NCBI GenBank assembly: GCA_002269645.1 | Contig: NIVC01003519.1 | Span: forward strand, 1 to 64,000 | Source: Macrostomum lignano | Lineage: Eukaryota | DNA length: 64,000 nucleotides | Direction of reading: 5' to 3' | Shown: positions 6,637 to 57,880 of the stretch, piece by piece | Position numbering within the stretch: position 1 is the stretch's first letter | Layout: every line of letters starts with the position of its first letter | Translations under genes and position numbers: made by a program | The notes under the pieces: model-generated | What the model saw: the letters and a program-made list of their open reading frames with translations, nothing else | Databases searched by the model: none | Told to the model about the DNA's origin: nothing

Positions 6637-7985
6637 CTATTTATTAAGAGCGGACAGCTTTTTATAGCAAACCGAATTTAAAATGAAGTCCTGAAGTTCC
6701 TCCAGCAGTTTCATGAAACCAGCGCGGAAGATTGGACTGCCCATTGCAGACAAGATAGGCACGCTGTCGAATATTAACGTTAGAATTAAGTAGCTACCGA
6801 TGAAACTTGAAAATCTACCACTGCCTTTCGTTGGGCCATTCAGAATAGATACGAGGATGTAAAGCATAGTCAAGCAGATTAGCATTGGAATCAGCAGCTG
6901 ATAACAAACAATAAGTTGCTTCAGTTCATTCAAAAGCGAACAGTTCTGATTGCTAGAGGGCAGCGATTCGATTACCACTTCATCGCTGGCCGCAGAAGTC
7001 TCGATTCCAGCTTCATCATTTTCAGGCTCGTCGAAATGTCGCCTGTAGGCTACGGACTCGCCCACCGTCTGCTCAGCAGGCGCGCCTCGGCAGCAGGCGC
7101 AGCACTGCTTGCAGCCGAACACAATGAGCGGAATAAACGCCAGTAAAAACTGGACGAAATAAACATAAAAGCTGATGGTATAGTATCGTCGGATACCGCT
7201 ATTGAAATAATCAAATCGCATATAAGGATCGGACAACACATAGGCAGTGTCGTTGTTAACACAGTAAAGGAAGCCATGTAGCATCAAGTCCAAGCATGTT
7301 ATGCCCAGGGCAATCAATGCCGCTGAGCCGTACACAATGCAAGTCCGACGAACATGGGTGAAGAGCAGAACTCTCTGAGCAGGATGCGAATACTCAACTT
7401 GGACTATAGCGGTCAGGAAGTAGAAGCTTACGAAAGCAACCAGGCTGGCTTTGTGCATCCAGTTGCAGAAATTGATGAATAGGATGAAGAGCGCTGCGTG
7501 CGGAACCGATGTTACTCTCACGGAGCTTTGAACAGGCCACCACTGCGAAACTGCTTCCGCGATCGAAAAGACAAAGCCCAGTACACAGAAGAGTCTCAGC
7601 AGCAGCAGTTTAATGCGGATCTCTGGGTTGAGGCTTTTCGGCGACACCAGACAGCCAGTGCGGTAAAATTGGCCAGAGCAGACAGGCAGTTGATGATAAT
7701 CACTGCTTGATAGATGTTGATCCATTCGCTATTATAAATTAGCTCGTAGCCTTGAGTGGCTTCGCAGTTGTCGCTTCGCCTCGTGACGCACATCAGCGGC
7801 TTCAAGGTGTCATTTTCACTGCCGATGAGCCAAGACCACTTGGACAGTCGCGCCTGACTTACCGAGCATCTCCAGTGCGACCGGGGCTGAAAATAGATTT
7901 TGTGATGCTCTTTGCTCCATAGAGATAAGTTTCTGGCGTACTGCTCGGCAGAATACTCTTCTGACAGGTAGCCCTCGTCCAGCAT
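6637..7985 (-). pseudogene. Intronless divergent 7TM GPCR-like gene A with a frameshift after TM1
   Basis: ORFs 7596-8057 and 6637-7725 join into one protein that aligns along its length with the 9845-11205 paralog. About 7 hydrophobic segments; TM1 ALANFTAL; TM7/helix-8-like DSVPILSAMGSPIFR. A frameshift near 7630 corresponds to about 10 nt missing relative to the paralog. Confidence 0.62.
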
Positions 7986-9844: not shown

Positions 9845-11205
9845 ATGGGCGAGCGCGACCTAGCGGAAGAAGAAATTGACAAAGAATGGCAGGCAAGCGA
9901 GATTTCCTTGGAGACTCAGAGTCGAAATGGAAGTTCAAAATTGCATCCGCTCTGTTCCGCAAGCCAGACCAAACTATCCGGCTATGCTTGGCTGATTGGG
10001 CGGCCTCACGGTGCCATCAAACCGCTTATGTGCATTGCGCCTGTGCAATCAAATTGTACTCTTAGCAGTATTGCTAGCAATGATGATACTATCATGGGCG
10101 TATTTGATTGGATTTTGATTGTCTTCTAGTGCTTGTTCGTCCTGGCCAATTTGATCTCTATGGCTGTATGGTTCCGACGAAAAGCGCCGATCCAATGGAA
10201 CCGGGAGGTCAGAATTCAGCTGCTCCTATTGAGGCTCTTCAGCGTTCTTGGCTTCGTTTTTTCGCTGTCGGTTGTTGGAGTGATCTGGTCGATTGGTCAT
10301 CCGTCGTTTCGCGTCATCTCTGTACTGCACGCGGCTTTGCTAGTCTACTTAGAGAACTTTATATTTGGCTTGGTGCCTACTTGCTCGCTCTTTTTACCAG
10401 TGCTGAGTTTTATAACGGCCATATTTCTGATTGAGCACTCCCAGCCGTCGCGAACTGTGTTGCTCTTTAGCAGTTTTACTGTTGCTAAAGTTCTTATTCT
10501 GGTGGCCCTGCTAGTCTGCATAGTTATAGAAAGCCCCGTTTTTCTATTGCACGGTTTCGTCTATTGTGAAAGTTCTGCAGGTGCCACTCTATTACTAAAT
10601 GAAATGTTTCTGAGGGTGCCATGGAAATTTTTGAGAGTAATTCGGATTACTTCCGAATTTATGTCACTTCTGGCGTCAATTCTGGTCATTATCTTGCTAT
10701 TTGTGTTCGCCTGTCTGCGTTATTGCAATAGTTGTCAAAGCCAGCCATTCGAGCAATCGGCCTCCGTATCGGCCGTCGCCTACAGTCGTCACGTGGACGA
10801 TTTGGACGAAGTCGGGGACGACGAACAGACTGAAAATGTGGTAATCGACTCTCTACCGTCGGTGCCAAATGCCGTCCGGGTGGCTGACGAACTGCGGCTA
10901 ATCCTACTCTGGCACCAGATTTTATTCGGCGCAGGCTTCGTACTTGTAGTGTTTACTCTTGTCGTAGTGCATGTAGTCGCCATTCTGCACGGCATGGTAT
11001 TTTCAAAACTGGTTAGTGGCCTATTTCACCTGATAGGACAGTGTCTGTTCTTTAGCAGCCTTGTTATACATCGCCGCTGATGAGCGCAACAATCCGAGAT
11101 GACATCGTGTCAGTTCTAGTTGCGATCAAACGGCTGCTCCAGTCATTTATCTGCTGTCGCTGGGTGCCAGCAAGGCGTGGGGACGGCTTAAGTTTGCTGA
11201 AATAG
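9845..11205 (+). pseudogene. Intronless divergent 7TM GPCR-like gene B with an in-frame TAG and a late frameshift
   Basis: ORFs 9845-10129 and 10133-11080 are in the same frame, separated only by TAG 10127-10129 within TM1. After about 11062 the alternative frame (TSPLMSA...LLQSFICC, stop 11203-11205) matches the paralog tail (PILSA...LQDFIL). Confidence 0.62.
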
Positions 11206-12629: not shown

Positions 12630-15600
12630 TTGCCTTCACACGCGTAGGTGATACTGGGTCGAATAATGCCGGTGTAGATCCACCTGACCGTCTTGGAGAT
12701 AGTCCCCAGGTAGGCCGGATGGCTCTCCTCACCTGCGCGAAGCAGCGTTTAGCGCGCCCAATGACATTGTCAGCGTGCTTGGTCCAACGCAGATCGTGCG
12801 TGAGCGTCCCACCTAGATATTTTGTTTTATACCAGGGCAATGCCGTTACAATGGCTGGTGAGGTTCCGCATGCTCCACTTCCGCTTCCTGGTGAAGATAA
12901 TGGCAACCGTCTTAGCGGTGCTAGGTTAGGCCGTGCCGGGTAGCCCAGGTTTGCGCCTTATCGGCGAACTGCTGCATCAAGCTTCGAATGGTGCTGGTGT
13001 CAGGGCCACTGACAATAGCTGCGACATCATCAGCGTAGCCTGCTTTGACGATGCTGCTGGGGACGTCAGCCGTCAGGAGATCGTCCACCACGAGATTCCA
13101 GAGCAGCAGGATGAGCACCCCACCTTGGGCTCCGCCCTTTGTAACCGTATGGGTGCAAGTGGCATCCCTGAGGGTAGAAGTCACTTCTCTGTTCCGGATC
13201 ATAAAATCGATCCATCGCATAAAACGTTATTGAAGGCCCCATCGATGTCACAGAAAAGACCACAGGCGATCTTCTTGCTCAGGATAGCTTTCTCAATGGC
13301 TGAGGTAATAACATGCAACGCGTGCTCAGTAGTTTTACCTGGTTGGAAGGCGAATTGGTGCGTACTTATGGGTGCCATCCTCAACTCGCTGTCCCGCAGC
13401 CTCCACAAGAGCTCTCTCCATAAGCTTAATACAAAAGGATGTTAGGCTGATGAGGCGGAAGGATTTAACATTAGTATAGTTGCCTTTGGCAGGCTTGGGA
13501 ATGAAGACCACTCGAGCGGTCCTCCAAATAGTGGGGATGTACCCGGTTGTGAAACAGTCAATGATGAGCTTGGAGAAAACTGCAGAAAACTCTGCAGCTT
13601 AACCGCTTCCTGGAGAACACAGGGGGCGATATTGTCCATACCAGGGGCTTTAAACGGCTTAAAGGTGTTGGCGGCCAGCTGTATTAAGTTCTGCGTGGCG
13701 CATTGCTCGAAAAGCTGCCGATCTCTCGGGTTATGATCAGCAACAATTTGCTCAGGACGTTTGCAGGTGGGAAAACACGACGAGAAGAGCAAATTGAGGG
13801 ATTCCCCGGCGGTTCTGGAATAGTTTCCATCCAAATGGAGGAGGGAGTTGCACTGGGCGAGGTTGTCGTGCCTGAGCGACTTTAACAGCCGGGCTGTGGG
13901 ATGGCCCTCCAAACCGGCGCAGAAAGCCTTCCAGGTGTCCTTTTTGGCCTTCCGGATACAACTCTTGTAGGTTCTCAAAGCTGAGTGGTAGATCTCCCAG
14001 TCCTCTGGGGTGTTATTCTGGTTGGCCATCCGATGCAGCCGACGGGAGGTCTTTTTCAACCGGGTGAGCTCCTTGTTCCACCATGGTGAGTACTTCTTCC
14101 TACCGACAATTAGAGGGGCGTTTTTCATCGTGGCTGCATTTAGCAGCTCGACAAGCTTTTTGCATCGGGCTTCAATGCTCGGGATTTCTTCGCAGCCTTC
14201 CAGGTCTTCGGCCGGTTCGCTGCTGATCAGAGATTCGAGGTCTCTTCTAAAGCCGGTCGAGTCCGCCCTTTTTAAATTTGGACGGTTCGCCTTGGTGACG
14301 CGAGTGCCGCCAACAGTAACGCTGAAATGGGCGTAAAAATGATCCGAGAGCGAGGGAATGTCGTCTCTGACCATCCAATTTTGAATCTGGTTAAGGATGC
14401 TACTGGACGCAAGGGTGAGGTCAATAACCTCTTTCCTGCTAGCGTTTGCAAAGGCGGGTTTTCTCCCCAAATTTCAAATATGCAGATTCGACGTGAGTAT
14501 GAAGTCAATAAGCATACTACCTCTGAGGTTGGCGTTACTGCTAATAATGAGGTTTTTGTTCTCGATGGTACAGAAGTTGGCAAGATCCTACGGGAGGGGA
14601 GACGGAAATTCATCCTGAATATCCATGTACACGAATGAGAAAATCATCCCGTTAACGGTGAAGGTACAAATGTCTTTATTGCAAAACATCGGCATGAGCA
14701 TGGCTGAGAGCTCGCGCTTGACCAGGGCAATGGCCCTAGGGGTTTCACCTCTAGAAAGGGAGAGAATCTGGTAGCCTTTCGGCAGCAAGGTGGGCTTACC
14801 TCGCACGGTGTAGGGCTCCTGAATAAAGTAGATGTCCACACCGGTGCCACCAAGAGTGTCAGTGAGGCTGCTGGAGGCTGCGACCGCGTGGTGCAGGTTG
14901 ATCTGCACGATATGCAGGTTAGGATCCCTGTTCTGCGTGAGTGTGGTAATATCATCATTGGACTCACCCGCAGGTTTGGCCCTCAGACGGTCACGCCTCA
15001 TCATTAATAATGTGGGCATGGCGGGTCGAGAACAAGTCTCGCCCTCAGAGCTGTCCGGGCTCTCGGAGTCGTCCCGGCGCTGCTCACCGCCGGCCTTGCG
15101 CTTCCTCCTCGGGATGAGGTGGAAGACTACCTTCCACGCTCCAACGTAGATAGCGTGGCCGTTACCTTGCATGTAGCACTCCCAGTCGGCGGAGAGGTCC
15201 ATGTAGAGGGTTTTCCCGTTGCCATCTTTGGCCGGCACCTCCTTGAAGGCCAGGAGGCCGTCCGCAGGCAACTCGAGGTGCTTGGCGACCAGACGACCGC
15301 GTATCTCCTCGATCGTCCTAGTCACCGAATAGAAGGCCCTGTACCTCTTACAGGGAGGCGGAGGGCGAGCTTTCTCAATGAACAGCTCCGGGAGCTATGT
15401 CTTGGAAGTACCCCAGTGGATGCTGGGGAGGTTAGCTAGGGCGGCGTTCAATTTGTCTTCGCTTTTGAAGGCGAGGATGAGATTGCCGTTAGCGAATCTA
15501 ATGGACTCGGCCTCAACACCGAGTTGGTCATTGTCCCAGAGGAAGTCGATGTGAGCGACGGCGCCTTCTATCTGAGCATCGCTCAGTGTTCCACTAGCTG

Positions 15601-16157
15601 TACGGACACAGATTTTGTGGAGGGGCTCAACTGCCACCTTGGCGTAGGAGCCGGCTGTCCCCCTGCTCTTAGAGCGCGCTTCGGGTCCTGTGGGACAAGC
15701 GTGCGGTCCTCTGGCTGCTGCCGCTTGCGGACTGTGCTGGGGGCCGCGTTTTACTTCGCTGTCGCGGTGCGTGGTGGTATCACCACCAAATTCTCCACCA
15801 GTGGGAGTCGAACTTTCCCCACTAGGGGTGTTAACCGCGGGGTTCGCGAAGAGAATTACCTCCGAGTTGGAGGGTTGGAGAGATTTTTTGCTCAGAATCC
15901 ATAGAAGAATAGCTGAAATGGGGAAGAGACGCAAGTTAGAAAAGGCAGACCGACGTTCGGGGACTGGAAATACCCCCAGTCAGCCAGAGGCTACCCCCTG
16001 CCACGGCGAACAGCGGGAAGGCTTTGGGTCATCATCTCTGACCCGGGATTTCCCCCAGGCTAGGCTTCGGCAAGCCCCCGGTCCACACTCTGCAAGATCA
16101 GGGGCGGGGGCCGGGTGTAGGGTTGGGTTCACAGCGCCAGGTCGGGTGGTTGACTGT
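12630..16157 (-). mobile_element. Degenerate non-LTR retrotransposon (ORF1-like + APE endonuclease + RT), R1/LOA-like, 3'-truncated
   Basis: APE: IVQINLHHAVAAS, DIYFIQEPY, SDHF. RT: [69 protein letters not shown]. Several frameshifts. Coding similarity stops at about 12635 with no RNase H or 3' tail. Clade assignment is by motif recall only. Confidence 0.93.
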
Positions 16158-17636
16158 TAGCAAATTTCAAGAACAAATCCCTTTATAAATAACGAAAAGC
16201 CAGGAACTTGCGCCCTATCCTACTAAAAGAGTAAAGCAAAAAGGAGATGCATGTACATGTAAGAATTAACTCAGGTGCGATTAGATGGCACAAGGAAGTT
16301 TCCTAGAATAAAAAAATGATTGACTACTAAATATTCATCACTACATGTACATTCCAATTCTACATGTATTTATTTAGATATTGCAATCATGGCAGATTGG
16401 ATGACATTAAATTGCATTTATGAAGGACTACTTAAATTATTTAGCAAAAAACTACAATTGATCGTAGCTGTCCTTGGTATATAATGTAGTGTACATGTAC
16501 ATGTTTAAAAGTGTATAGCACTAAAAACAGAATCAAAACAAGACCGAAGAAAGAAATCCATCAATCTCAAAACAATGGTCTAACTCAGTCAAGCATTACT
16601 CATCACATCATGCGTAACGTTTCTAGTCCGCTGTCGGCCAACCAGTCAGTCGCCCTTGAATCGGTTCATTAGCTAACTGAGATCTAGCTTTTTTAAATTA
16701 AGTAAACAGATACCCTGCTTTTCTGCGATAGATCGAGAAACACTATTGTTAAAAAGCTAACAGGTAAAAAATTAAGTCTATTATTAAAACATTTCATAGA
16801 AAACTTCGATGCATCACCGTAAAAAATATTTTTTAGGCAAATTTAAAAAAACGGTCAAACGGTTCTTGAAAGATCAATTACAGACAAAAATTAGTATATA
16901 GATTAAAATAGCTACATGTACTTTAAAATATAAGAAAATTTGTTGAATGTGTTATAATAAGTAAATACGCACCAAAATAAACAATCAATTTTCTTAAAAA
17001 TTTACGTGCAGAATTCTATAGATTCGAAACCTTCCAGAGTTCAAATATTAGAAGTAGCTAGCGATCCTGAATTTCCGGGCTGACAACCGATAAAAATTAA
17101 TAAATTATAAGTTGAACATAATATTTTATATTATATATTTTACTCTATAGCTTTGAAATTCGTGACTTGTGGCAGTCAACATCAACATATAATGGGCATA
17201 CGAGAGCAATAGGCTTTCATGTTGTTGATTCTAAATCAAAATTAGTTTGAGAATTTTTATTCTTTTGGCTTGTCTTTTTTCAGATAAACTTGAGTGATTA
17301 TAAATGTTTGTTAGAATATCCTTTCTAAACTAGTCTTTGCCATTAACTCTTATTTATAAAAAATATAACTTATTGCAGTCCCCTTGTCCCTTGAGAGATC
17401 TTTTAAGATATTTTTCAAATGAAAGCATGCTATCAGTTTAAACTGTTTATTACTTTTTAGCTGCTGATGTGATTTAGCAAGGTTGTCAATGGTAAATTGT
17501 AGCCTTATGAGCATTTTTAACGGTGTTCATAAGTACATAAGTCAATGGTATAAAATAAAAAATTCTATATGAACATGTATTTGAGATTTAAATAATTCCA
17601 ACCTAGTTGTCTATGGAATATTTCAGTCAGTTCGCG

Positions 17637-19431
17637 ATGCTTTATCCAATAGCAAATAATTTTCAACTTGGCTTTGAAAGCTCAGAAGCTGACCAAATCC
17701 GACTAGCAGCTGTGGGACTATCTAACTTCCTCGCAGCTCCATCACCTTTGATTCAATGTGAAGAATTGTCCAGTGTGATTGGTCAAACAGTGCTGCTCAA
17801 GCTTGAACACACTTTACCCAGTGGATCATTCAAGATTCGTGGTGCATTTAATAAGATCAGCAGTGTGTTGAAGACCGCTGACCAGGATCAGGTAAAACTT
17901 AAAACATTTTGCTAATAACTTTAGCATTGAAAATTAAATTAGATGGACTATCTACCATGCTTTAAAAGTCTGCAGATCTCAATTGAGCTAGGCCACTTTT
18001 TATGCAAATTGCATCGCTGGTATACAAAGTTTTTAGTTTATATATAGCACATTATAGCACAGTTTATACTATAAACAAGTATGTTTTTGTCTATTAAAGC
18101 TATTAAAAAAGACTTCCTTTTCTTCGTAAATGGCCCAACAATGGGGTTTGTACCCTGTGGAACAGTAGTGCAAAGCACCCTTAAAATGGATTTTACCACT
18201 GACAAAACGTAATGGAAACATCTGGCAAGAGTACACAGCCAAGAGATAAGAATTCGGCCCATCATTACTAGATTTGCACATTAGTTCTGTATGTGTATGT
18301 TTTGATCTCTACAAAATGAAATGATAACAAACGTCACGTGGGAATTCTAATTTCTGTGAGCAGAAACCACAGTTTGTTACCAGTAGCGCTGGCAACCACG
18401 TGCTCGCCTGCTGTCACGTGTGGCAGCAGCTGGGGGTGTCGGGCAGCGCGGTTTTCGTCCCCACCACGGTGGCCCCGGCCAAGGAGGCCAAACTCGCTCG
18501 GCTGCACGAGGCTGGCCTCATTCGGCTCAGCAAAGTCGGCCGCGAGTGCCTGGAAACCGAGCTGGCAGGTCGCGAGTTCGCTCTCCGCTGTCCCGCCTCA
18601 GTGTACGTGCCGCCCTACTCGGACTGGGAGGTCATCCGAGGTCAGGGCTCGGCCGCGTTCGAGCTGCTCCCGGACCCGACTGGGACCGGCTGGGCCGGGC
18701 AGCTGTCCGCCAACTCCGATTGGCTGGCGGCTGGTCACGTGACTCTGCTTGTGCCGACGGGTGGCGGCGGCCTATTGGCTGGCGTGGCTCTGTGCGCCAA
18801 GCTGGGCCGGAGCGGCCTGCGGACGACTGTGATTGGCTGCCAGCCCGAGGCGGACCAGGTGCTGGCCAAGTCTGTGCAGGTAGGCCTTATCTTAATTTGC
18901 TTATCAATAATTAGCAGGATTTAAATAGTAAAGGTTGTCTCAGTTCCAAACAAGTTTCTATTGGCTGAGAGCGAGTCACGTGATACAGAATTGTAGCAGA
19001 TGGCACCGTGGCTGTAAAACACACCATTAAGAATTCTTAGTGAGATAATTACCTGATAAATTACATTTATTATCAAGGCCGGTCGACTTCTAAGCTACGA
19101 CGAGGCCGGTTCGCGCGAGACGGTTGCGCAGGGTACGGCTGGCGCTGTAGAAGACGGCTCGCCGACCTTTGAAGTTTGCCGCCAGCACGTGGACCGCTGG
19201 TGCTCGGTGACGGAGCAGGAGATCGCCCGGGCGTGCCTGCGACTCAACAGAATTTTAGCGGCCGAAGGGCAGCCGAGAGCGGAGCCAGCGGCCGCCTTGG
19301 GAGTCGCTGCAGCCCTGAAGCTGGCCGGGTCGCTGCCTGCGGGGCCCGTCGTGGCCTTCGTAACGGGCGGCAACGTGGGGGACGCCGAGATGGAGCTGGT
19401 GAAGAGGCTGGCTGATGAGGCAGTCTTGTAA
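17637..19431 (+). CDS. PLP-dependent fold-type II serine/threonine dehydratase-racemase family, copy 1 (SAGNH type)
   Basis: Exons 17637-17891, 18364-18879 and 19078-19431, all phase 0. Motifs: LKLEHTLPSGSFKIRGA (PLP lysine), TSSAGNH, GQG, PTGGGGLLAG, TGGN. Stop TAA 19429-19431. Confidence 0.88.
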
Positions 19432-20039
19432 TTGAGCTGACTCAATATTTACAGTAAAGACTTTTACTCAATGATTTCTTGTGGACAGCCGAAGTCAAAG
19501 ATCGCCGCACTTGCAACTAATGCAAATTTTGCTATAAGCATGAAGCATGGCGCTAAATTTCGACATGCGCCACAAAGTCGCTGGGAAATCTCTCTATAAA
19601 AATTCACTAAGGATGCAGGAGGAGCGCTCTTTGGCGGCAATCGTCAATGGGATGATTAGCTCAGCCTTCTGTCGTGTTAGTTATATATAAAAGCTCTAAA
19701 ATTCTTCCAGTAAGTCATGCTTTTCAGTGTAATTCCTTATTTAGTTTTCAATATTGATTGTATAAATAATTTTTATCTACACTGCGCCTTGGTGACGTTG
19801 ACCATCCATTTTATTACAATAGTAGTATTCGAATCGCAATATTTCGAACAGAATAAAAGTGCGCATTGATATTTTTTACTATTTTTCTTAAAATTTGGAA
19901 ATTTCGAATTGTAAATAATAACTGGAGACTTTTCAATATTATTTTAATTATATTTTATTCACGGGAAGATTCGTTATTTACTACTGGAAATGGTGCAAAT
20001 TATGTAGCTGTAGTGCGTTATAGAGTTATTTTCTCTTGT

Positions 20040-20290
20040 ACAGTCTAATCTGCAGTGAGTCACATCCTAATGGATAATGTACAGTCTAATCTGCAGTGAG
20101 TCACATCCTAATGGATAATGTACAGTCTAATTTGCAGTGAGTCACATCCTAATGGATAATGTACAGTCTAATCTGCAGTGAGTCACATCCTAATGGATAA
20201 TGTACAGTCTAATCTGCAGTGAGTCATACGAGTATTCTAATTAATAATGTACAGTTTAATCTGCAGTAAGTCACATCCTAATTCGCATCG
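20040..20290. repeat. 41-bp minisatellite between the two dehydratase-family genes
   Basis: TACAGTCTAATCTGCAGTGAGTCACATCCTAATGGATAATG, about 6 units, degenerating to the right. Confidence 0.93.
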
Positions 20291-20491
20291 TGACAATCTA
20301 ATATTAAGTTAGTCACATCCTAAAGGTGTATTATGCATTCTAACGTTTATTAGGCGACATGAATATGCAGTCTGCTCCGTGATCTTCCATAATGCATCTA
20401 TACTATTCTATATACCAATCTGGTTTTTGAAATAGGTGCAACCATCAAATACTGCAATTGCTCTTCATCAAAACTTCAGCTGGCAGCCAGC

Positions 20492-22546
20492 ATGCTGCAG
20501 TATCCACTCAGCTGTGACGTTGCCCAGTTCTTAGAAAGTTCATCCGAGGCCGACAAAATTCGCTTAGCCGCCATGAAATTGTCCAGCTTCCTTGGAGCTC
20601 CATCGCCTTTATTGGCATGTCCACCAGAGTTCAAGTTTAGAAACAACGATGCTAATGGCCCTCTACTGCTCAAGCTTGAGCACACTTTGCCAACTGGTTC
20701 GTTTAAAGTTCGAGGTGCATTCAACAAAATTAGTAGCACAATGCAAAATGCTACTGCTGACGGACAGGTGAGTGCCGGGGGTCTGAGACTGATGAAATCG
20801 TGAATAAAGCTATAGTTAATGATAGTGCATTTAGCAGCCACCAAATTCCATAGCTGTAGGTAATCTTACAGCGATGACTCAATTTATTGCATGCTCAAAA
20901 TAGAACCTGTGAGAGTTGCTCAGCTTCACGCTTATTGGAAAAGACAAATAGGAACAAAAAGCAACTTAGGTCAACCGAGAAATAAAAACTAGAAACTGCA
21001 GGGACCGACCTCAACGACCAGCCAGTAGTATGTCTCATTTTCGGGCCTGCCAGACCGGTTGCTATGTCGCATATTGGCTGCACCGGTGTTGCAATTTCGC
21101 GACTATCCTGGGTTTTTTGTCTGGCCCAGATATCCGAACGCGCTAATTATTATACGATATCCCTCCGGATACTGCCAAGCAAAAAACATGCTTTGTTTTC
21201 TCCTTCCCGGATATCTTGAGCTGCAGTTTAGGCCAAACTGCAATTTTTACACGATGTCTATGGCAATTTCCTATCCCTGACCAAATTGATCGCAGTTTTG
21301 GCCCACTTTCGGCTTCAACTGTTCGTCCTTATTGGCACCCTGTACAAGGCGAACTAACTAAATCTTCAATCTGCAGAATAGTCAGACTCGCTGAAATTGA
21401 TCTCGGAGCGAAATTAAGAGAATATTTTGATTATTGATATCTCATTTCATTTCTCATTTCGATGGTTTCTATTGCCTCTACTCCATTCTTCGATCGGTTT
21501 GAGGACCAAGTAGTCATTTGGTTTCTCCTTGCAAAACAGCTCGTTCTGTCGCACATTAACAGCCCATTGTTATTCGCGACGCGCATTGTCTGGAATAGCG
21601 GAGGCCAGTTTTGCTTCTATTTCCGCATCATCTACCTTTGATCATCTATATCTAAACTTCATTTGGTCTGTCAATATTATAGAATATTATAAATCAGAAA
21701 GCACAAGCGCGAGGCAAGATATGTCGTCTGGGATAAAAAAAGCCAAAACAATTGAGCCTCCAGCGAAGCAGTTCTTGCTTTCATCCGTTGGGACATTTTT
21801 TGACAAGAGCCCGACTGATAAAACCTGCTCATATGCTGCATATCTGCACGAAAGCATAAAACTATTTTACCATTTTATTTCTGTTCTCTACTTAACGCAG
21901 GCACCGCCGCACTTCGTCGCTAGTAGTTCTGGCAACCACGTGCTCGCCTGCTGTCACGTGTGGCAGCAGCTGGGGGTGTCGGGCAGCGCGGTTTTCGTCC
22001 CCACCACGGTGGCCCCGGCCAAGGAGGCAAAACTCGCTCGGCTGCACGAGGCTGGCCTCATTCGGCTCAGCAAAGTCGGCCGCGAGTGCCTGGAAACCGA
22101 GCTGGCAGGTCGCGAGTTCGCTCTCCGCTGCCCCGGCTCAGTGTACGTGCCGCCCTACTCGGACTGGGAGGTCATCCGAGGTCAGGGCACGGCCGCGTTC
22201 GAGCTGCTCCCGGACCCGACTGGGACCGGCTGGGCCGGGCAGCTGTCCGCCAACTCCGATTGGCTGGCGGCTGGTCACGTGACTCTGCTTGTGCCGACGG
22301 GCTGCGGCGGCCTATTGGCTGGCGTGGCTCTGTGCACCAAGCTGGGCCGAAGCGGCCTGCGGACGACTGTGATTGGCTGCCAGCCCGAGGCGGACCAGGT
22401 GCTGGCCAAGTCTGTGCAGGTAGGCCTTGCTGTGTGTTTTGAGAGATTTTATATGATGTGCGTGAAGTGGGGACTCTGTATGATAGTGTGAGGATTCTGT
22501 GTGATACTGTGACAATCGTGTGCCATAGTTTGAAGATTATTATGAC

Positions 22547-22585
<39 letters not shown>

Positions 22586-24115
22586 TGATTACACCTGCCC
22601 TAATAGGCAGATGTGCAACCGACAGCTCAGCCGCAGGTATTGCGCGGCGCATCTGAAGGCTGCGTACGGCTGTCCAGTCCAAGGACTGGGGGGTCGCCAC
22701 ACACACCCTCAATTTCCCCAGCAATTGCTGGCACCCATTTTACAGCTGGGTGAACTGAAGCAGGGTTAAGTGTCTTGCTAAAGGACAAAAATTGTTTTAG
22801 TGGGATCGGGAATCGAACTCCCGACCTTTTAGTCGTGAGTCTGACTCTAACTACAGGCCCTCTAACCTCCAGTTGTGATTTTTTTATTTTAGAGGCAGGG
22901 GGGTTGTGTGCACCCTGGCGCACTTTAAGCGACATAGGCACACAACCGGCGAGAGGCATTACTGCCCATTCCGCCGACTCACCTGAGCAGGCACACAAGC
23001 GCGCGGATACGTACGCAGGCACACACTCACACAGGAGTGTACAGCGGCCCTAACTTTATTTTATCGTTAGGCATGTACACTTCACTGCGCCTTGGGGGGT
23101 TGGCTCTCAAGGCGGTTAATTGCACGAGCAGAGCCAAGCCGAGATTCCAATTCAGCCCCAAATTAATGTGACTGCACTTGGAATCGAGCCTGGGTCGCTG
23201 GCACACCAGAGCAGCTGCGCTACCGCTGGGCTACGGCCCCCCTTTCCAGTTGTGATAGTTGTGATAGATTCCGTGTAATGTACAGTACGAGTCTGACAGA
23301 TGGTTCAAACTGATTGATAGACAGTTAACTCACGGGGGAATTTCTCAGATGTCAAGACTCAAAGTCGATGATGTTATTCTGACTGTTATGACTGTATAAG
23401 GCTTCCTGTATGTCAAGTTTTTACTTTTTTATTTTTCATTTTGTTACCTCCCTCACGCGGGAATAGGATTGCAACGACGTAGTTTTGAAACTAAACATTT
23501 AAAGACGATAAAAGAAAAGCGCAAGTGCACTTTACAAAACACACCTGATCACTTGACCATTGTTGGTGCTGTTTCCCCCCACAAGTTTCTATTGGCTGAA
23601 ACCGAGTCACGTGATAACTATTTCATCCTATAGCAGCGCAGCTTGTAATAACGCAGTCAATAAAGACCAAAATGTACCACAGATGGCACATTGTGATTAT
23701 AAAACACACAATTAAGTATTCTCAGTGAGATAATTACCTGATAATTACATTTATTATCGAGGCCGGTCGACTTCTAAGCTACGACGAGGCCGGTTCGCGC
23801 GAGACGGTGGCGCAGGGCACGGCTGGCGCTGTAGAAGACGGCTCTCCGACCTTTGAAGTTTGCCGCCAGCACGTGGACCGCTGGTGCTCGGTGACGGAGC
23901 AGGAGATCGCCCGGGCGTGCCTGCGACTCAACAGAATTTTAGCGGCCGAAGGGCAACCGAGAGCAGAGCCAGCGGCCGCCTTGGGAGTCGCTGCAGCCCT
24001 GAAGCTGGCCGGGTCGCTGCCTGCGGGGCCCGTCGTGGCCTTCGTAACGGGCGGCAACGTGGGGGACGCCGAGATGGAGCTGGTGAAGAGGCTGGCTGAT
24101 GAGGCAGTCTTGTAA
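20492..24115 (+). CDS. PLP-dependent serine dehydratase-racemase family, copy 2 (SSGNH, racemase-type)
   Basis: Exons 20492-20767, 21901-22419 and 23762-24115, phase 0. Motifs: LKLEHTLPTGSFKVRGA, ASSSGNH, PTGCGGLLAG, TGGN. The exon-3 acceptor is an unusual GAG. Confidence 0.84.
22547..22860 (-). mobile_element. SINE family 1 copy (CORE-like) with (TTA)n tail, intron 2 of copy 2
   Basis: Reverse complement matches 2465-2775; B box AGTTCGATTCC; trinucleotide tail at 22547-22585. Confidence 0.8.
22880..23244 (-). mobile_element. SINE family 2 full-length copy with 12-bp TSD
   Basis: A box TAGCCCAGCGG, B-box-like GGCTCGATTCC and an A-rich tail. TSD TCCAGTTGTGAT at 22868-22879 and 23245-23256. 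Confidence 0.82.
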
Positions 24116-24534
24116 TTGAGCTGACTCAATATTTACAGTAAAGACTTTTACTCAATGATTTCTTGTGAACAGCTGAGGTAAAAGATCGCCGCACTCAGCT
24201 TTTCACTTCAGTCAGAACCGATACTACAGGCTGTTGACCCTCTGCGCTTTGTAGATTTTTGCTTTCTCAGCCTCCTCATGTTCTTCTGTCCGTTCTTCGC
24301 CCTTCCTCTTCAAGCGGTTCCTCTTGTACTTCTTCCTCTATGGCTTCACTACTGCCCTCAGCCAGCCATCATGGTTGATTTGAAAGGTCTATAGTTTATA
24401 TCCCGTTAGCACAGGGTTTTCTTTTCCAAGTTAAATCGGTTAGGAACACGCAGCTTTGTCCACACTTCGGTTCCGACTGAATTTTAAAGCTATCGAACTT
24501 CTATATTGGTTTCAGAAAATCTATCAAGTCAAAC

Positions 24535-24744
24535 CATGGATGAATAACATAACTGGATCGCCAAATGTTCGGTTTTTTTGGTCATAGACATAGACAATTG
24601 CGCCAACATCACAAGAAGCTCAGGATTCTGTACTTTCATGCACGAGTTGTGACCCCACTTTGAGCTTCTTGTGATGCCGGTGCTTGTCTATGGCTAGGAC
24701 CAAAGCAATAGAGCTTGGCGATCCAGTTATATTATTCATCCATG
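24535..24744. mobile_element. 210-bp hAT-type MITE
   Basis: About 30-bp TIR CATGGATGAATAA(C/T)ATAACTGGATCGCCAA with further internal symmetry. 8-bp TSD AGTCAAAC at 24527-24534 and 24745-24752. Confidence 0.85.
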
Positions 24745-26872
24745 AGTCAAACTCCCTTACGTCTGTTTCAGTGTCCAAATTGATGCTGTCTCATGATTTT
24801 GCGGGCCGCACGGTCCACGGAATCCTCAGTGTGCCCATGAATCCATTCCGTACTCGCTAGTTTCGTCCATGGTTAATGGAAGGTAATAGGAAGGGAGAAT
24901 TTTATAGTTAAAGGTTCCATCTGCTGCATTGGTCGAAATGCCACTTCGCGGTTATAACCTCTGATTAATGGTCAGTCATCAACTGTATTGTATGTTCCTT
25001 AGAAATTGTATGTATGCTTCGTCCATAGACAGTGTATATATGCGTCGGCCATAGACAATGTATGTATGTCTCGGCCATAGATAATGTATGTATGTTACGC
25101 ACTCGTGACCTTGGCTAATACCTTAAACTCTCGCTCCACATAAAACTTCCCTTAATTGCATTGTCTATGGCCGAAACAGTCGGTCAGTATAACGACAGAG
25201 AGGTCATTGATCGAAATGTCACTTCACGTTAATTTCCTCTGATTAATGACCGGTCATTAACTGTAAGACAAACGGCAATTTTAATAGCCTGTGGCTGTAG
25301 AGGCGCTGGTTTCGGCTTGCCTGAAATGTTGAGATGTGAGTCTTGCTGGAGAGGCATGAAAGTATCTGGAGAGAGATGGAAAGGGCTGGAGAGGGCTGGC
25401 GAGGGCTGGAGAGGCCTGGTGAGGAGGTAGAGTGAGGCTGCTAAAGAGACTGAAGCCACAGGGAGACGGGAGGAAAGAGTATCGGATAAATGGGGAGCAA
25501 GGGATACGAATACAACGGGATTTGGACTGGGTCAAACTTTCGACTGGCGGAAAGTAGAATGTGGGGAGCTGAAGCTGGTCTGGGCACAACAGGTACTTGA
25601 CTAGTCAGACACTAAGACAGGCAGCCAGCAGATTAGAGTTCAATCGACCTGACTCACTTTTCTTGGAAGACGAACACCCTTCGCTGCAGAGCAGTGTTGC
25701 AGCAAGACAGCCCAGAAGCAGCAGCCATCGGACAGACATCTTCAATGCAGAAAGAGCAGCAAAAACGCTTTAAAGCTTAAGATATCGAATTCGACTGACG
25801 ACAAAAACTTTCTGCAAAGTCGGTCTTCGCTCCGAGGGTGACACCAAGCGCTTGCGAGCCTCTCAGCTGCTGAGCTGCAGCCATAGACAGTTCTGTACAA
25901 AGTGATTCCTGTCTCACTAGCAGCGTCTGAGGGCCGACGATTGTCTATGGCAAAATACCGGCCTAATGAAGATGCGGAGGCGTGCACTTTTAATACAGTC
26001 ACTACTGAGTCTGCAGTCAATCAATGCAGCTAACCTACCATTACCATGCAGTGACATTTCGATCAATGCTTAGTGGCGGCAACGAAACGATGAGACAACA
26101 CCGCTCTGCTTATGCCTATGGATTCGAGGGCCCGAATTAAGTCCGCCCGAAAATCCATTGGCAGAACCATTAGTTCGGCTTGTTCAAAAAATAGGTAGGT
26201 TTAGTTAAATTTAGTTTAGTTAAAAATTATAGATTTTGTTAAAAATAGGAGGCAAAAAGGTGTCGTTGTTTTATTTGAAACTCGAAATATCTCAGAGACT
26301 TTTACAGTGAAAAACCGGCGTCCCATGTTAGTTGACGTTCTACTAACAAATAAATCTAGAGTCTCTAGAGTCTCTAGAGTCTCAAATAATTAGAGACTTA
26401 TTTGACGTGGATTTTGAGTTTTCTGATATGTTAATTTACAGACTAAATTGCAATTAGCACAACAGATTTCAACAAAATCAATTCAAGAAAAACCACCAAT
26501 GGAAACCAGGGCTTTCTTCCAGAGACCCATGTAAATGATAAATTAAATGCACTTAATTTTGGTACAACATCTTGCCAAGTCGCGTATACAGGAATCAGCT
26601 GTGTCTAAAATCGATGCTTGGATGTTCACTTTTGGTAGTTGAATCATCCGCGGAATTTTTTATCATATCTAATCGTATCGCTGTTTGGCGAGATATAACA
26701 CAATTGAAACGTCCCAAAATAAGACTAACCTACTTGATACTACTTACAAGCCAAAGTTATAGTAGCACATGCCGACTCTTTGGTCTCGAGTGTTCGCTTC
26801 AAATTATTTTTGCAAAAAATACTTCATCTTACTTGACAGGTGACACCACAGAATATTCTGTGGGCGACACTG

Positions 26873-28948: not shown

Positions 28949-31900
28949 TTACATTACTACACACGTAGCAGACTTCGGATTAACGCTAAATGTTCCCGTA
29001 ATTTCGTTGAATGCGACGCCGTCGTTCTCACTGCCGGTTTCCACGGATGTAGCAGCGGCAGTAGCTGCAGGTTGCGCAACAGAAGTGGCTCCTGTTGCTG
29101 CTGTCGGACGTTTCGTCAGCTTGAGCCCGGCATAGGCAGCCACGGGTCCGCAGTCGATGGCCAAATAGTTCAAGTCTGGCGTGAATGCCAAACAGTTGAT
29201 GCCGTGCAAAGATTCGAATGCGCTCAGCACGGTCCAACGAGCAGTCTCCCACACGATGAGGCAGTGATCCATGCCGACCGTCACCATTCTCTGATAGTCC
29301 GGCGTGAACTGCAGCTTCAGTACGAAACTTTTGTGCCGCCGGACGCACCGTTCCAAGCTGCCGCCTTCAACCGACCAGAACAGCAGCGACCGAAATCCTG
29401 CGGTGACAAGAGTCCGACCATTCGATGGGAAGAATTTCATGCAGATGCAGGAGCTGCGAAGCTGGAACTTTTTCAGATATTTGCCTGAATCGGCTTCGAT
29501 GAGTTTCACGGAGCCGTCGGTGCTGGCTGCCGCGGCCAGTCGGCTGTCGTCGCTGACGGCGATGGCGCTGCAGCCCGCCATCATGGTGTCCATCTGGTTG
29601 GGGTTCAATGGCCCACTGTCGCCCGTCTCAAGGCTGTACGCGATTGGAAAGTCGAAAAAGGTGCCGATGCACTGGGGAATGGGAGGTGTTTGAAATTTAC
29701 TTGACTTCACTTTCAGATGACGAGCCGTAATTTTTATAATTAAAATTTTCAACAAAAGCAACATTTTAGACGGGCGAGAAATTGCGAATCTAGTTAGACG
29801 GAGAAGAGTCACCTGTTAGAAGTCACCTGTTAGAAGTCACCTGTTAGACAGATGAGTCACCTGTTAGACACAGATGATCCACCTGTTAGACACAGAGGAG
29901 TCACCTGTTAGACACAGATGAGTCACCTGTTAGACACAGATGATTCACCTGTTAGACACAGAGAAGTCACCTGTTAGACACAGATGAGTCACCTGTTAGA
30001 CACAGATGATCCACCTGTTAGACACAGAGGAGTCACCTGTTAGACACAGATGAGTCACCTGTTAGACACAGATGATCCACCTGTTAGACACAGAGGAGTC
30101 ACCTGTTAGACACAGATGAGTCACCTGTTAGACACAGAGGAGTCACCTGTTAGACACAGAGGAGTCACCTGTTAGACACAGGTGAGTCACCTGTTAGACA
30201 CAGATGATCCACCTGTTAGACACAGAGGAGTCACCTGTTAGACACAGATGAGTCACCTGTTAGACACAGATGAGTCACCTGTTAGACACAGATGATCCAC
30301 CTGTTAGACACAGAGGAGTCACCTGTTAGACACAGAGGAGTCACCTAGCTGTTAGACACAGAGGAGTCACCTGTTAGACACAGAGGAGTCACCTGTTAGA
30401 CACAGATGAGTCACCTGTTAGACACAGATGATCCACCTGTTAGACAGAGAGGAGTCACCTGTTAGACAGAGAGGAGTCACCTGTTAGACAGAGAGGAGTC
30501 ACCCGTTCGACATGGGTCCACCCCAACTGCCAGCCGGAAAACTGCCAGCCGACAACTGCCAGCCGACAACTGCCAGCCGGAAAACTGCCAGCCGACAATT
30601 GCCAGCCGACAACTGCCAGCCGACAACTGCCAGTCGACAACTGCCAGCCGACAACTGCCAGCCGACAATTGCCAGCCGAGAAAACTGCCAGCCGGAAAAC
30701 TGCCAGCCGACAACTGCCAGTCGACAATTGCCAGTCGACAATTTCCAGCCGAGAAAACTGCCAGCCGGAAAACTGCCAGCCGACAACTGCCAGCCGAGAA
30801 ATCTGCCAGCCGACAACTGCCATCCGACAAGTTCTAGCTAATTGAATCTACTGTAGCCTACTTATTAGCTAAGTAAAAAGCACGAAACTGTTTGGCTAGC
30901 AAAAGGCTTGTGGGGTAGCCTTAAATGTCGCCCTTCCCTACCCTAATTTTTTCAGATTTTCATTAGAAGTATATATGTGAAGGAGAAAGCATTCAAATTT
31001 CGTATTTTAGGTAGCCTTTGGTCTTTCTTTGAAAGCTTTATTTAATTAAAGTAATTTAATAGACTTATCTAGGATTGCGTCATATAGCAATCGCAAATTA
31101 AATAATAAAGTAAATAAACTTTCAATACAGAAATATTTACAATAGGCATTACAGAATGCCATCTCCTTCACATATATACTTCTAATGGAAATCTGAAAAA
31201 ATTAGGGTAGGGAAGGGCGACATTTAAGGCTACCCCACAAGCCTTTTGCTAGCCAAACAGTTTCGTGCTTTTTACTTAGCTAATAAGTAGGCTACAGTAG
31301 ATTCAATTAGCTAGAACTTGTCGGATGGCAGTTGTCGGCTGGCAGATTTCTCGGCTGGCAGTTGTCGGCTGGCAGTTTTCCGGCTGGCAGTTTTCTCGGC
31401 TGGAAATTGTCGACTGGCAATTGTCGACTGGCAGTTGTCGGCTGGCAGTTTTCCGGCTGGCAGTTTTCTCGGCTGGCAATTGTCGGCTGGCATTTTTCGG
31501 CTGGCAGTTGTCGACTGGCAGTTGTCGGCTGGCAGTTGTCGGCTGGCAGTTTTCCGGCTGGCAGTTTTCCGGCTGGCAGTTGGGGTGCTCCCGTTCGACA
31601 TGTACTTTACCACCAGTAAAATATCTAACGACTTACAAAGCTCTTAGCAAAATACACAAAATATAGCATTAATTTCTATTCACCTTTTTCCCATTTGGCG
31701 TGAGCCCGACCTGATTAAAGCCGTACAGTCCGGGCATTTTATGCATTCGCTCCCCAGTTGATAGGTCAAATACGTATCCGTAGCATTCCATACCGGCTTT
31801 ACCAGCCACTAGAATGTTGTTGCTAAGAGCCAGACAACTCGGCTCGCCTCCCTCGATCGATAGAGTGTGCAATTCTGCGCCTAAAATGCATTTAGTTTGT

Positions 31901-57129: not shown

Positions 57130-57880
<751 letters not shown>

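What the first reader, a model, noticed from the sequence alone, without database searches (positions are those of the whole stretch)
17637..24115. Tandem paralogs that differ at the serine racemase/dehydratase switch residue (SAGNH vs SSGNH)
Seen: copy 1 exon 2 reads FVTSS-A-GNH (GCT 18388-18390) and copy 2 reads FVASS-S-GNH (TCT 21928-21930). From the very next codon the two exons are nearly identical. Established: in fold-type II PLP enzymes this position is human serine racemase Ser84 (THSSGNH), the re-face acid/base required for racemisation, while serine dehydratase has Ala there (A65), and swapping the residue shifts the activity. Inference: this may be a paired L-Ser dehydratase plus D-amino-acid-producing racemase that share a homogenised large domain but keep the switch codon and exon 1 distinct. 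That would point to a D-Ser/D-Asp pathway in this animal. Caveat: the racemase metal-site region reads CQPEADQV rather than AEPSNADD.
Basis: partly seen in the sequence, partly recalled or inferred. Interest (0 to 1): 0.8.

Follow-up and report, generated by a model that had tools for sequence, protein, structure and literature searches.

The report
Tandem flatworm PLP dehydratase-like paralogs
Two neighbouring copies of a vitamin-B6 (PLP) amino-acid dehydratase-like gene in the flatworm Macrostomum lignano keep old, distinct front ends but have nearly identical back ends through gene conversion; they do differ at a known catalytic position, but they are not serine racemase genes and nothing yet shows that either makes D-amino acids.

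Summary
The window comes from Macrostomum lignano. It holds two intact three-exon genes for fold-type II PLP enzymes: c1 (374 aa, SSAGNH) and c2 (382 aa, SSSGNH). The variable residue aligns with human serine racemase Ser84. The same tandem pair, with the same Ala/Ser difference, occurs at two other loci of a public M. lignano assembly, so it is not an assembly artefact.

- The genes do not belong to the serine racemase clade. They are divergent members of the PRK06815-like "threonine/serine dehydratase" family, which has relatives in Capsaspora, a sea anemone and a hemichordate.
- They lack the racemase metal-site ligands, Q89 and R135.
- In this family the site is Thr or Ser in 93% of the closest representatives, so the Ala of c1 is the derived state.
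- Gene conversion homogenises everything from the next codon to about 80 nt past the stop, intron 2 included.
- The switch codon lies 25 nt from the edge of homology. A similar part-diverged zone exists at the non-coding 3' edge. The boundary therefore needs no selection to explain it.

c2 has no gene model at either public locus, and I found no expression data for it. The window's c2 allele also carries a Gly-to-Cys change in the PLP phosphate loop. Racemase activity remains untested. Interest is modest.

The parts
17637..17891 (+). c1 exon 1 (85 codons), the old paralog-specific module. It contains the PLP lysine K66 (AAG 17832-17834) in SGSFKIRGA.
   Evidence: Splice model and translation. 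100% identical to exon 1 at L002 and 96.9% to L001. K66 aligns with hSR K56.
18364..18879 (+). c1 exon 2 (172 codons). The first 25 nt are paralog-specific and the rest is homogenised with c2.
18388..18390 (+). c1 codon GCT = Ala94, aligned with hSR Ser84. This is the derived state in the family.
   Evidence: Ala in c1 at all three loci.
19078..19431 (+). c1 exon 3 (117 codons plus stop TAA), homogenised with c2.
18391..19511 (+). c1 side of the gene-conversion tract: the rest of exon 2, intron 2, exon 3 and about 80 nt of 3' flank.
   Evidence: BLASTN at 98.0% and 96.1%. Variants shared within a locus, including in the intron. dS within a locus is 0.03-0.05, against 0.08-0.12 between loci.
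20037..20323 (.). 41-nt tandem repeat (6.8 copies) in the 1060-nt spacer between c1 and c2.
20492..20767 (+). c2 exon 1 (92 codons), the old paralog-specific module. It contains the PLP lysine K72 (AAA 20705-20707) in TGSFKVRGA and a 4-residue insertion (PPEFKFRNNDANG region).
   Evidence: 100% identical to L001 c2 exon 1 and 94.9% to L002.
21901..22419 (+). c2 exon 2 (173 codons).
21928..21930 (+). c2 codon TCT = Ser102, aligned with hSR Ser84. This is the ancestral-like hydroxyl state.
   Evidence: Ser in c2 at all three loci.
22303..22305 (+). c2 codon TGC = Cys227, replacing the second Gly of the PLP-phosphate tetraglycine loop (hSR G186). It is private to the window allele.
   Evidence: The column is Gly in at least 90% of 50 homologs. 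L001 and L002 c2 read GGGG.
22429..23580 (.). About 1.15 kb of extra sequence in c2 intron 2, including (AAT)13 at 22547-22585. It interrupts the homogenised tract and is absent from L002 c2.
   Evidence: Intron 2 is 1342 nt in the window, 936 nt in L001 and 245 nt in L002..
23762..24115 (+). c2 exon 3 (117 codons plus stop TAA).

Best explanation
The locus holds two tandem paralogs, in the neopolyploid flatworm Macrostomum lignano, of a divergent branch of the PRK06815-like "threonine/serine dehydratase" family. This family of fold-type II PLP enzymes is old in holozoans.

Each gene is a mosaic of two ages. The 5' module (exon 1 plus the first 25 nt of exon 2) diverged long ago: synonymous sites are saturated and omega is about 0.1-0.15. 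Everything from the codon after the Ala/Ser site, through intron 2 and exon 3, to about 80 nt past the stop is kept nearly identical by repeated gene conversion within each locus.

The residue aligned with serine racemase Ser84 is Ser in c2. That resembles the ancestral state, since the family is 93% Thr or Ser there. It is Ala in c1, which is derived.

Inferred mechanism: both proteins bind PLP through the conserved Lys and carry out alpha-deprotonation followed by beta-elimination on Ser, Thr or a related beta-hydroxy amino acid. c1 has lost the re-face hydroxyl and should be limited to elimination. c2 keeps whatever the ancestral hydroxyl does, whether substrate positioning or re-face proton transfer.

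The Ala/Ser difference survives mainly because it lies in the short edge zone next to the non-homologous intron 1, where conversion tracts do not reach. Selection may add to this but is not needed.
For: Identity and organism:
- c1 is 99% identical to PAA62256.1 of M. lignano.
- Pfam finds only PALP, at 155-165 bits.

Family placement:
- The best NCBIfam model is PRK06815 at 188/179 bits, against 114/105 for the racemase-like PRK07048. As a control, human SR scores BhcB 356, PRK07048 329 and PRK06815 263.
- In an NJ tree the Macrostomum genes sit inside the PRK06815-like clade with 95% bootstrap. That clade excludes hSR and IlvA in 59 of 60 replicates.
- An exhaustive HMMER search finds relatives in Capsaspora, Actinia, Glandiceps, Chromosphaera and an alga among the top ten.

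The site: 97 Thr, 42 Ser, 7 Ala and 1 Ile among the 149 closest representatives. The 60%-identical outgroup transcript has Thr.

Real tandem pair: the same arrangement, intact ORFs and Ala/Ser states occur at L001 and L002.

Gene conversion:
- L002 c1 and c2 share private variants in exon 2, exon 3 and intron 2.
- dS within a locus is 0.03-0.05, below the 0.08-0.12 between L002 and the other two loci. In the 5' module dS is 2.2-5.3.

Edge effect: intron 1 is unrelated between the paralogs, and a zone of about 30 nt of partial divergence also precedes the loss of homology in the 3' flank.

Chemistry: K56, S83, G85, N86, H87, K114 and the Gly loop are conserved. S84A removes racemisation but keeps elimination (PMC6424897).

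Fold: the structure model has pLDDT 90.6 and matches TdcB, IlvA and SR about equally.
Against: - No enzyme of this family branch has, to my knowledge, been characterised, so "dehydratase" is a homology label.
- The Macrostomum proteins score far below the PRK06815 cutoff (188 against 371). They also carry a 17-residue insertion and substitutions such as D238 to Q, so their substrate could be something else.
- The exact coincidence of the conversion boundary with a catalytic codon at three loci is also what selection against converting that codon would produce.
- c2 has no gene model at either Mlig_3_7 locus, and no c2-type protein appears in the protein collection searched, so its expression is unproven.
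- Constraint specific to c2 can only be read from its 5' module. There it is weak: 9 non-synonymous against 7 synonymous changes, p = 0.052.
Confidence: 0.6

Rival explanations
1. c1 is an L-serine dehydratase and c2 is a true serine or aspartate racemase. The pair supplies a D-Ser/D-Asp pathway, and selection holds the switch codon against gene conversion.
For: - c2 has the full Lys/Ser two-base pair and the conserved K114 equivalent (K133) proposed to activate Ser84 (PMC6424897). c1 has Ala, which abolishes racemisation in three racemases.
- The Ala/Ser difference is fixed at three loci despite conversion immediately downstream.
- Both 5' modules show long-term purifying selection, with omega 0.08-0.17.
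Against: - The genes lie outside the racemase clade.
- The metal ligands E210 and D216, the ATP-coupling Q89 and R135 are all replaced.
- Thr or Ser at this site is the family default, and it also occurs in proteins named threonine deaminase, such as PDB 1ve5.
- Six of 20 bacterial racemase homologs tested showed serine dehydratase activity rather than racemase activity (PMC11850409).
- The boundary is explained by the edge of homology.
- c2 has no gene model in the public annotation, and the window allele has a Cys in the Gly loop.
Confidence: 0.13
2. The Ala/Ser difference has no functional consequence, and c2 is a redundant, weakly expressed or decaying duplicate. Its 3' two-thirds look healthy only because conversion keeps copying c1 into them.
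For: - c2 has no gene model at L001 or L002 although c1 does, and no c2-type protein appears in the collection searched.
- Omega in the c2 5' module between loci is 0.28-0.36, against 0.14-0.17 for c1 in the two comparisons with L001.
- The window c2 has Cys at a Gly that is at least 90% conserved in the phosphate loop.
- c2 introns have taken up large insertions.
- In L002 the c2 intron 2 is c1-type and carries L002-private variants shared with c1, which suggests c1 sequence was copied into c2.
Against: - The c2 5' module is intact, with start codon, GT-AG splice sites and the PLP lysine, at all three loci.
- Its long-term omega against c1 is about 0.1-0.15 even though synonymous sites are saturated, which indicates long functional constraint.
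- Missing annotation may reflect transcript assemblers collapsing near-identical 3' parts (inference).
Confidence: 0.24
3. The two copies are a haplotype or assembly artefact, or a recent bacterial transfer or contaminant.
For: - M. lignano is a neopolyploid that is hard to assemble (PMC10733133).
- The first word-based search listed only bacterial or metagenomic relatives, at 41% identity or less.
- Exons 2-3 are unusually GC-rich, with GC3 of 0.78.
Against: - The tandem order c1 then c2, with unrelated intron 1 and saturated exon 1 divergence, recurs on two independent contigs.
- Both genes have spliceosomal introns and sit among animal genes.
- The exhaustive search finds holozoan and metazoan relatives among the top ten hits.
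Confidence: 0.02

Closest known systems
NCBIfam NF005292 (PRK06815) threonine/serine dehydratase family and its eukaryotic relatives (Capsaspora XP_004347933.1, Actinia XP_031559687.1, Glandiceps XP_077992677.1)
   Same: - This is the best-scoring curated model for c1, c2 and the outgroup.
- The Macrostomum genes share its IGCQP, GNHxLACC and VD(E/R)W motifs and lack the racemase metal site.
- They nest in this clade with 95% bootstrap.
- c2 and the outgroup have the family's usual hydroxyl residue at the site.
   Different: - The score is 188 bits against a cutoff of 371.
- Identity is 41% or less to the relatives compared by BLASTP.
- The Macrostomum proteins have a 17-residue insertion (PDPTGTGWAGQLSANSDWLAAGH) and a longer N-terminus.
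- c1 has Ala, which only 7 of 149 close representatives share.
- No characterised member is known to me, so the name is a homology label.
Eukaryotic serine racemase (human SRR, PDB 3L6B/5X2L; S. pombe 1V71)
   Same: - Same fold-type II fold, with target-normalised TM-scores of 0.80-0.87.
- K56, S83, G85, N86, H87, K114 and the Gly loop are conserved. c2 also has Ser at position 84.
   Different: - It belongs to a different clade.
- E210 is Gln, D216 is Val, Q89 is Leu, R135 is Thr, HPN is PPY and S313 is Thr.
- c1 has Ala at position 84.
Mammalian L-serine dehydratase SDS (PDB 1P5J) and its engineered A65S mutant (PDB 4H27)
   Same: c1 has Ala at the position equivalent to A65. The natural Ala/Ser pair mirrors the engineered A65S swap.
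   Different: - The relationship is only distant (E about 1e-12 to 1e-13).
- SDS reads SAGNAG, not GNH, and uses Cys at the pyridine N1 (PMC6424897), where the flatworm proteins have Thr.
Bacterial threonine deaminases TdcB and IlvA (PDB 2GN0, 8Y1J, 1TDJ)
   Same: - They are the top sequence and structure matches in the PDB.
- They share the PPY(S/D)D motif of dehydratases.
- They have Ala at the site, as c1 does.
   Different: - Identity is 22-27% in the structural alignments.
- The flatworm proteins have no ACT regulatory domain.
- They fall in a separate clade in the tree.
Concerted evolution of tandem duplicates by partial gene conversion (general phenomenon, from textbook knowledge)
   Same: - Paralogs within a locus are more alike than orthologs between loci.
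- The tract includes an intron.
- Boundaries are sharp where homology ends.
   Different: Here the 5' boundary falls one base from a catalytic codon, so the only paralog-specific coding sequence is the first 94 to 102 residues.

Membership tests
Fold-type II PLP enzymes (Pfam PALP, PF00291) | Match to the PALP profile above the gathering score | tested here: met
   164.5 and 154.9 bits against a cutoff of 35.
Fold-type II PLP enzymes (Pfam PALP, PF00291) | Schiff-base lysine in S-F-K-x-R-G, S-x-G-N-H loop, tetraglycine phosphate loop, and a hydroxyl or thiol residue at the pyridine N1 | tested here: met
   K66/K72, S93-x-G-N-H, GGGG (GCGG in the window c2), T353/T361.
Animal serine/aspartate racemase family | Placement in the racemase clade, with best profile match to racemase-like models | tested here: not met
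   PRK07048 scores 114 bits and BhcB 96, against PRK06815 at 188. Human SR gives 329, 356 and 263 for the same models. The NJ tree excludes hSR from the clade in 59 of 60 replicates.
Animal serine/aspartate racemase family | Two-base pair: Lys56 (si-face) and Ser84 (re-face) | tested here: inconclusive
   c2 has K72 and S102. c1 has K66 and A94. Presence of the pair is necessary but not sufficient.
Animal serine/aspartate racemase family | Divalent-metal site (E210, D216) and ATP-coupling Q89 | tested here: not met
   Q245/Q253, V251/V259 and L99/L107.
Animal serine/aspartate racemase family | Measured racemase activity | not testable with these tools
   No enzyme data were found for these proteins or close relatives.
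NCBIfam NF005292 / PRK06815 threonine/serine dehydratase | Score at or above the curated equivalog cutoff (371 bits) | tested here: not met
   188.1 (c1), 178.8 (c2) and 183.4 (outgroup). P0003, P0004 and P0008 pass with 416-479 bits.
NCBIfam NF005292 / PRK06815 threonine/serine dehydratase | Best-scoring family and phylogenetic nesting within it | tested here: met
   It is the top model, about 50 bits ahead of the next. The clade has 95% bootstrap.
Mammalian-type L-serine dehydratase (SDS) | Close sequence relationship, S-A-G-N-A-G loop, Cys at the pyridine N1 | tested here: not met
   E = 7e-13 to 8e-11 against SDS and SDS-like chains. The loop is GNH and the N1 residue is Thr.
Concerted evolution by gene conversion | Paralogs within a locus more similar than orthologs between loci, with shared private variants | tested here: met
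   L002 c1 and c2 differ at 4 of 354 nt in exon 3, against 12-19 nt between L002 and the other two loci. The private intron variant gtaTgcc is shared.

The most novel reading that the evidence does not exclude
The pair is a natural version of the Ser84/Ala65 swap experiment. c2 keeps the ancestral re-face hydroxyl and racemises or epimerises an amino acid, while c1 has become a pure eliminase. Gene conversion erases every other difference downstream, so the functional split is encoded entirely in the first 100 or so codons, and selection pins the conversion boundary at the catalytic codon. By extension, the uncharacterised PRK06815-like family in holozoans, which is 93% Thr or Ser at the re-face position, would be an unrecognised source of D-amino acids in animals.
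Probability: 0.12. Interest if true: 0.6.

Novelty: new member of a known kind. Interest (0 to 1): 0.3.

Why it matters
If the Ala/Ser difference changes reaction specificity, this locus would be a compact natural experiment. The two enzymes have large domains that conversion keeps identical, and they differ only in an N-terminal module that includes the re-face catalytic residue. It would also point to a biochemically unexplored PLP enzyme family found from Capsaspora to cnidarians, hemichordates and flatworms.

As the evidence stands, the locus is mainly a clean example of partial concerted evolution in a neopolyploid genome. It also shows that a single "switch residue" cannot assign racemase function outside the clade where it was defined. 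A practical by-product is that c2 is an intact gene missing from the public M. lignano annotation.

Tried and rejected
- **Bacterial transfer.** The first word-indexed search gave only bacterial or metagenomic neighbours, and two of these sit in dense prokaryote-like contigs. The exhaustive HMMER search then found Capsaspora, Actinia, Glandiceps and Chromosphaera among the top ten hits. Vertical descent is enough, and I dropped the idea.
- **GC-biased gene conversion as the cause of GC-rich exons 2-3.** GC3 is 0.78 there against 0.36-0.49 in exon 1. But intron 2, inside the same tract, is only 35% GC, and the outgroup transcript is GC-rich along its whole length. Rejected as the sole cause; the pattern remains unexplained.
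- **Fold comparison to separate racemase from dehydratase.** TdcB, IlvA, SR and AspR all match about equally, with target-normalised TM-scores mostly 0.80-0.87. Uninformative.
- **Expression evidence.** No paper mentions both Macrostomum and serine racemase. The gene IDs Mlig018515 and Mlig017383 were absent from the supplementary files I could search.
- **Further copies in the window.** There are none.
- **tRNA or Rfam matches in the c2 intron insertion.** Nothing above threshold.
- **A second large protein search with the c2 N-terminus.** Not run. The c1 search would already have found any c2-type protein through the shared 3' part, and it found none.


Full report
**1. The observation**

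Reading 17400-24400 and splicing the obvious exons gives two complete genes on the + strand.
- c1 has exons 17637-17891, 18364-18879 and 19078-19431, and encodes 374 aa.
- c2 has exons 20492-20767, 21901-22419 and 23762-24115, and encodes 382 aa.
- All four introns are GT-AG and in phase 0.
- Codon GCT at 18388-18390 is Ala94 in FVTSSAGNH. Codon TCT at 21928-21930 is Ser102 in FVASSSGNH.

BLASTN between the two units aligns 18382-18888 with 21922-22428 at 98.0% and 18997-19511 with 23680-24195 at 96.1%. Exon 1 matches only over short stretches at 72-79% and is 54% identical at the protein level. There are no further copies in the window.

**2. Organism, and whether the pair is real**

c1 is 99% identical to PAA62256.1 of Macrostomum lignano, which UniRef names "L-serine ammonia-lyase". 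Two contigs of assembly GCA_002269645.1 (loci L001 and L002) carry the same arrangement. In each, c1 is followed 1.4-1.9 kb downstream by c2. All exons are intact, c1 has Ala and c2 has Ser. M. lignano is a recent polyploid (PMC10733133 and PMC5704211), so the three loci are probably homeologs or haplotypes. The pair is therefore not an assembly or haplotype artefact.

c2 has no gene model at either public locus. No c2-type protein exists in the protein collection that was searched.

**3. Mosaic ages and gene conversion**

I compared six genes: c1 and c2 at each of three loci.
- Differences fixed between the paralogs occur at 8 of the first 25 nt of exon 2. The last of these is the G/T of the switch codon. 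There are none in the remaining 845 nt of exons 2-3 (Fisher p = 1.4e-13).
- Downstream variants sort by locus, not by paralog. L002 c1 and c2 share private changes in exon 2, exon 3 and the C-terminus (KKLADEEDL), and even the first bases of intron 2 (gtaTgcc).
- By the Nei-Gojobori method, dS in the 3' part is 0.03-0.05 between paralogs of one locus. It is 0.08-0.12 between L002 and the other loci, and 1.35-1.5 to the outgroup transcript.
- In the 5' module, dS between c1 and c2 is saturated (2.2-5.3), with dN of 0.38-0.42 and omega of about 0.1-0.15.

The duplication is therefore old, and both 5' modules have been under purifying selection. Everything from the codon after the switch to about 80 nt past the stop, intron 2 included, is being homogenised within each locus.

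**4. Why the boundary sits at the switch codon**

Intron 1 is unrelated between c1 and c2, although it is conserved among loci within each paralog. Homology therefore begins only inside exon 2. The switch codon lies 25 nt from that edge. At the other end of the tract, in non-coding 3' flank, a zone of about 30 nt of partial divergence likewise precedes complete loss of homology.

Conversion tracts need homology on both sides. A short unconverted edge zone is expected without any selection on the codon (inference from general knowledge of recombination). Selection against converting the codon would give the same pattern and cannot be excluded.

**5. What the proteins are**

Pfam finds only PALP. 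The best NCBIfam model is PRK06815, "threonine/serine dehydratase", at 188, 179 and 183 bits for c1, c2 and the outgroup. All three are well below its 371-bit cutoff. The models related to serine racemase score far lower: PRK07048 gives 114 bits for c1 and 105 for c2, and BhcB gives 96 and 89. Neither model reaches the 1e-25 listing threshold for the outgroup. As a control I used human serine racemase. My recalled sequence matched PDB 5X2L at 100%. It shows the opposite profile: BhcB 356, PRK07048 329, PRK06815 263.

The word-indexed search found only bacterial or metagenomic neighbours, at 41% identity or less. The exhaustive HMMER search against 1.84 billion representatives showed a large gap: 775 bits for the Macrostomum cluster, then 196 bits. 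The next ten hits include Capsaspora owczarzaki, the sea anemone Actinia tenebrosa, the hemichordate Glandiceps talaboti (two genes on one scaffold), the ichthyosporean Chromosphaera, a green alga and Shinella. These share motifs with the flatworm proteins, namely GNHxLACC, IGCQP and VD(E/R)W.

An NJ tree places the Macrostomum clade inside this family with 95% bootstrap. The family excludes hSR and IlvA in 59 of 60 replicates. An AlphaFold model of c2 is confident (pLDDT 90.6), but it matches TdcB, IlvA and serine and aspartate racemases about equally, with target-normalised TM-scores mostly 0.80-0.87. Fold does not separate the alternatives.

**6. The residue**

In a MAFFT alignment, c1 A94, c2 S102 and outgroup T122 align with hSR S84 within an invariant S-x-G-N-H motif.

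| hSR residue | State in the flatworm proteins |
|---|---|
| F55, K56, S83, G85, N86, H87, K114, Gly loop | conserved |
| Q89 | Leu |
| R135 | Thr |
| E210 | Gln |
| D216 | Val |
| S313 | Thr |

Ser-to-Ala at this position abolishes racemisation in the Dictyostelium, S. pombe and human enzymes, and the human mutant keeps beta-elimination. S84T keeps racemisation at about one-tenth the efficiency (PMC6424897). A human SDS A65S structure exists as PDB 4H27.

The residue is not diagnostic in this family. Among the 149 closest representatives it is Thr in 97, Ser in 42, Ala in 7 and Ile in 1. In the wider, IlvA-rich set it is Ala in 102 of 122. Six of 20 tested bacterial racemase homologs showed serine dehydratase activity rather than racemase activity (PMC11850409). 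By parsimony the Ser of c2 resembles the ancestral state and the Ala of c1 is derived. This reverses the direction implied by "dehydratase plus new racemase".

**7. State of c2**

In favour of function:
- c2 has an intact ORF and splice sites at three loci.
- Its 5' module shows long-term omega of about 0.1-0.15.

Against, or uncertain:
- It has no gene model at either public locus, and I found no expression data.
- Omega between loci in its 5' module is 0.28-0.36, from only 9 non-synonymous and 7 synonymous changes (p = 0.052 against neutrality).
- The window allele alone has Cys227 (TGC 22303-22305) in place of the second Gly of the phosphate-binding GGGG loop, a column that is Gly in at least 90% of homologs.
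- Its introns carry large insertions that vary between loci.

**8. Verdict**

The locus is a tandem pair of divergent PRK06815-like PLP enzymes, most likely beta-eliminases, undergoing partial concerted evolution. The inferred mechanism is as follows. Both use the conserved Lys for alpha-deprotonation. c1 has lost the re-face hydroxyl and should be limited to elimination. c2 retains whatever role that hydroxyl plays in the family.

The racemase and D-amino-acid reading is not excluded. However, it rests on one residue interpreted outside the clade where its role was defined, so I give it about 0.12-0.13.

One feature is unexplained. Composition breaks sharply within each gene: GC3 is 0.36-0.49 in exon 1 and 0.78 in exons 2-3, while neighbouring genes are 0.42-0.64. 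GC-biased conversion alone does not account for this, because intron 2, inside the same tract, is 35% GC.

Noticed in passing
window 17637-17891 and 20492-20767 versus 18364-19431 and 21901-24115: Composition breaks sharply inside both genes. Exon 1 has GC3 of 0.36 (c1) or 0.46 (c2), while exons 2-3 have 0.78. Neighbouring genes are 0.42-0.64, intron 2 is 35% GC, and the outgroup transcript is GC-rich throughout. The cause is not resolved.
   Followed up: partly
window 17637-24115 compared with L001 and L002: The window is a mosaic of the two public loci. c1 exon 1 is identical to L002 and c2 exon 1 is identical to L001, while c1 exon 2 is closer to L001. This suggests recombination between homeologs or haplotypes, or a different strain or assembly.
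   Followed up: partly
window 22303-22305: A private Gly-to-Cys change (TGC) in the PLP-phosphate tetraglycine loop of the window's c2, absent from c2 at L001 and L002. It could be a damaging allele or a sequencing error.
   Followed up: partly
window 22429-23580 (c2 intron 2): About 1.15 kb of extra sequence, including (AAT)13 at 22547-22585. Intron 2 of c2 is 1342 nt here, 936 nt in L001 and 245 nt in L002. No tRNA or Rfam family matched above threshold.
   Followed up: partly
window 20037-20323: A 41-nt tandem repeat, 6.8 copies, in the spacer between the two genes.
   Followed up: no
window 24521-24758: A hairpin-like element with a sub-threshold Rfam match (MIR821, 70 bits against a gathering score of 249), just downstream of c2. 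It is probably an inverted-repeat element rather than a miRNA gene.
   Followed up: no
window 13442-15934 (- strand): Three long ORFs that look like a retrotransposon. This is judged by eye from the translations and was not searched.
   Followed up: no
window 6637-7725 (-) and 10133-11080 (+): Two paralogous ORFs with many hydrophobic stretches, in opposite orientation upstream of the PLP genes. They look like multi-pass membrane proteins, judged from the translations only.
   Followed up: no
window about 28949-37232 (- strand): Exons of a large gene of the NACHT/WD40-repeat type. A gene with those Pfam domains also lies downstream of the pair in L001.
   Followed up: no
window 41694-44466 and 50557-51303 (+): ORFs that resemble lysine-ketoglutarate reductase/saccharopine dehydrogenase (AASS) exons. 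This is from my own recognition of the translation and was not searched.
   Followed up: no
window 45464-47026, 47891-48868, 51541-52715, 55715-56437, 57120-57881, 59850-60703: Long minisatellite arrays that read as open frames on one or both strands, with repetitive peptide units such as SLLKESPL and SVSQ. They dominate the 3' third of the window.
   Followed up: no
P0130 and P0290 (Glandiceps talaboti): The hemichordate also has two very similar genes of this family on one scaffold, both with SSGNYG. This may be another case of duplication in the family.
   Followed up: no
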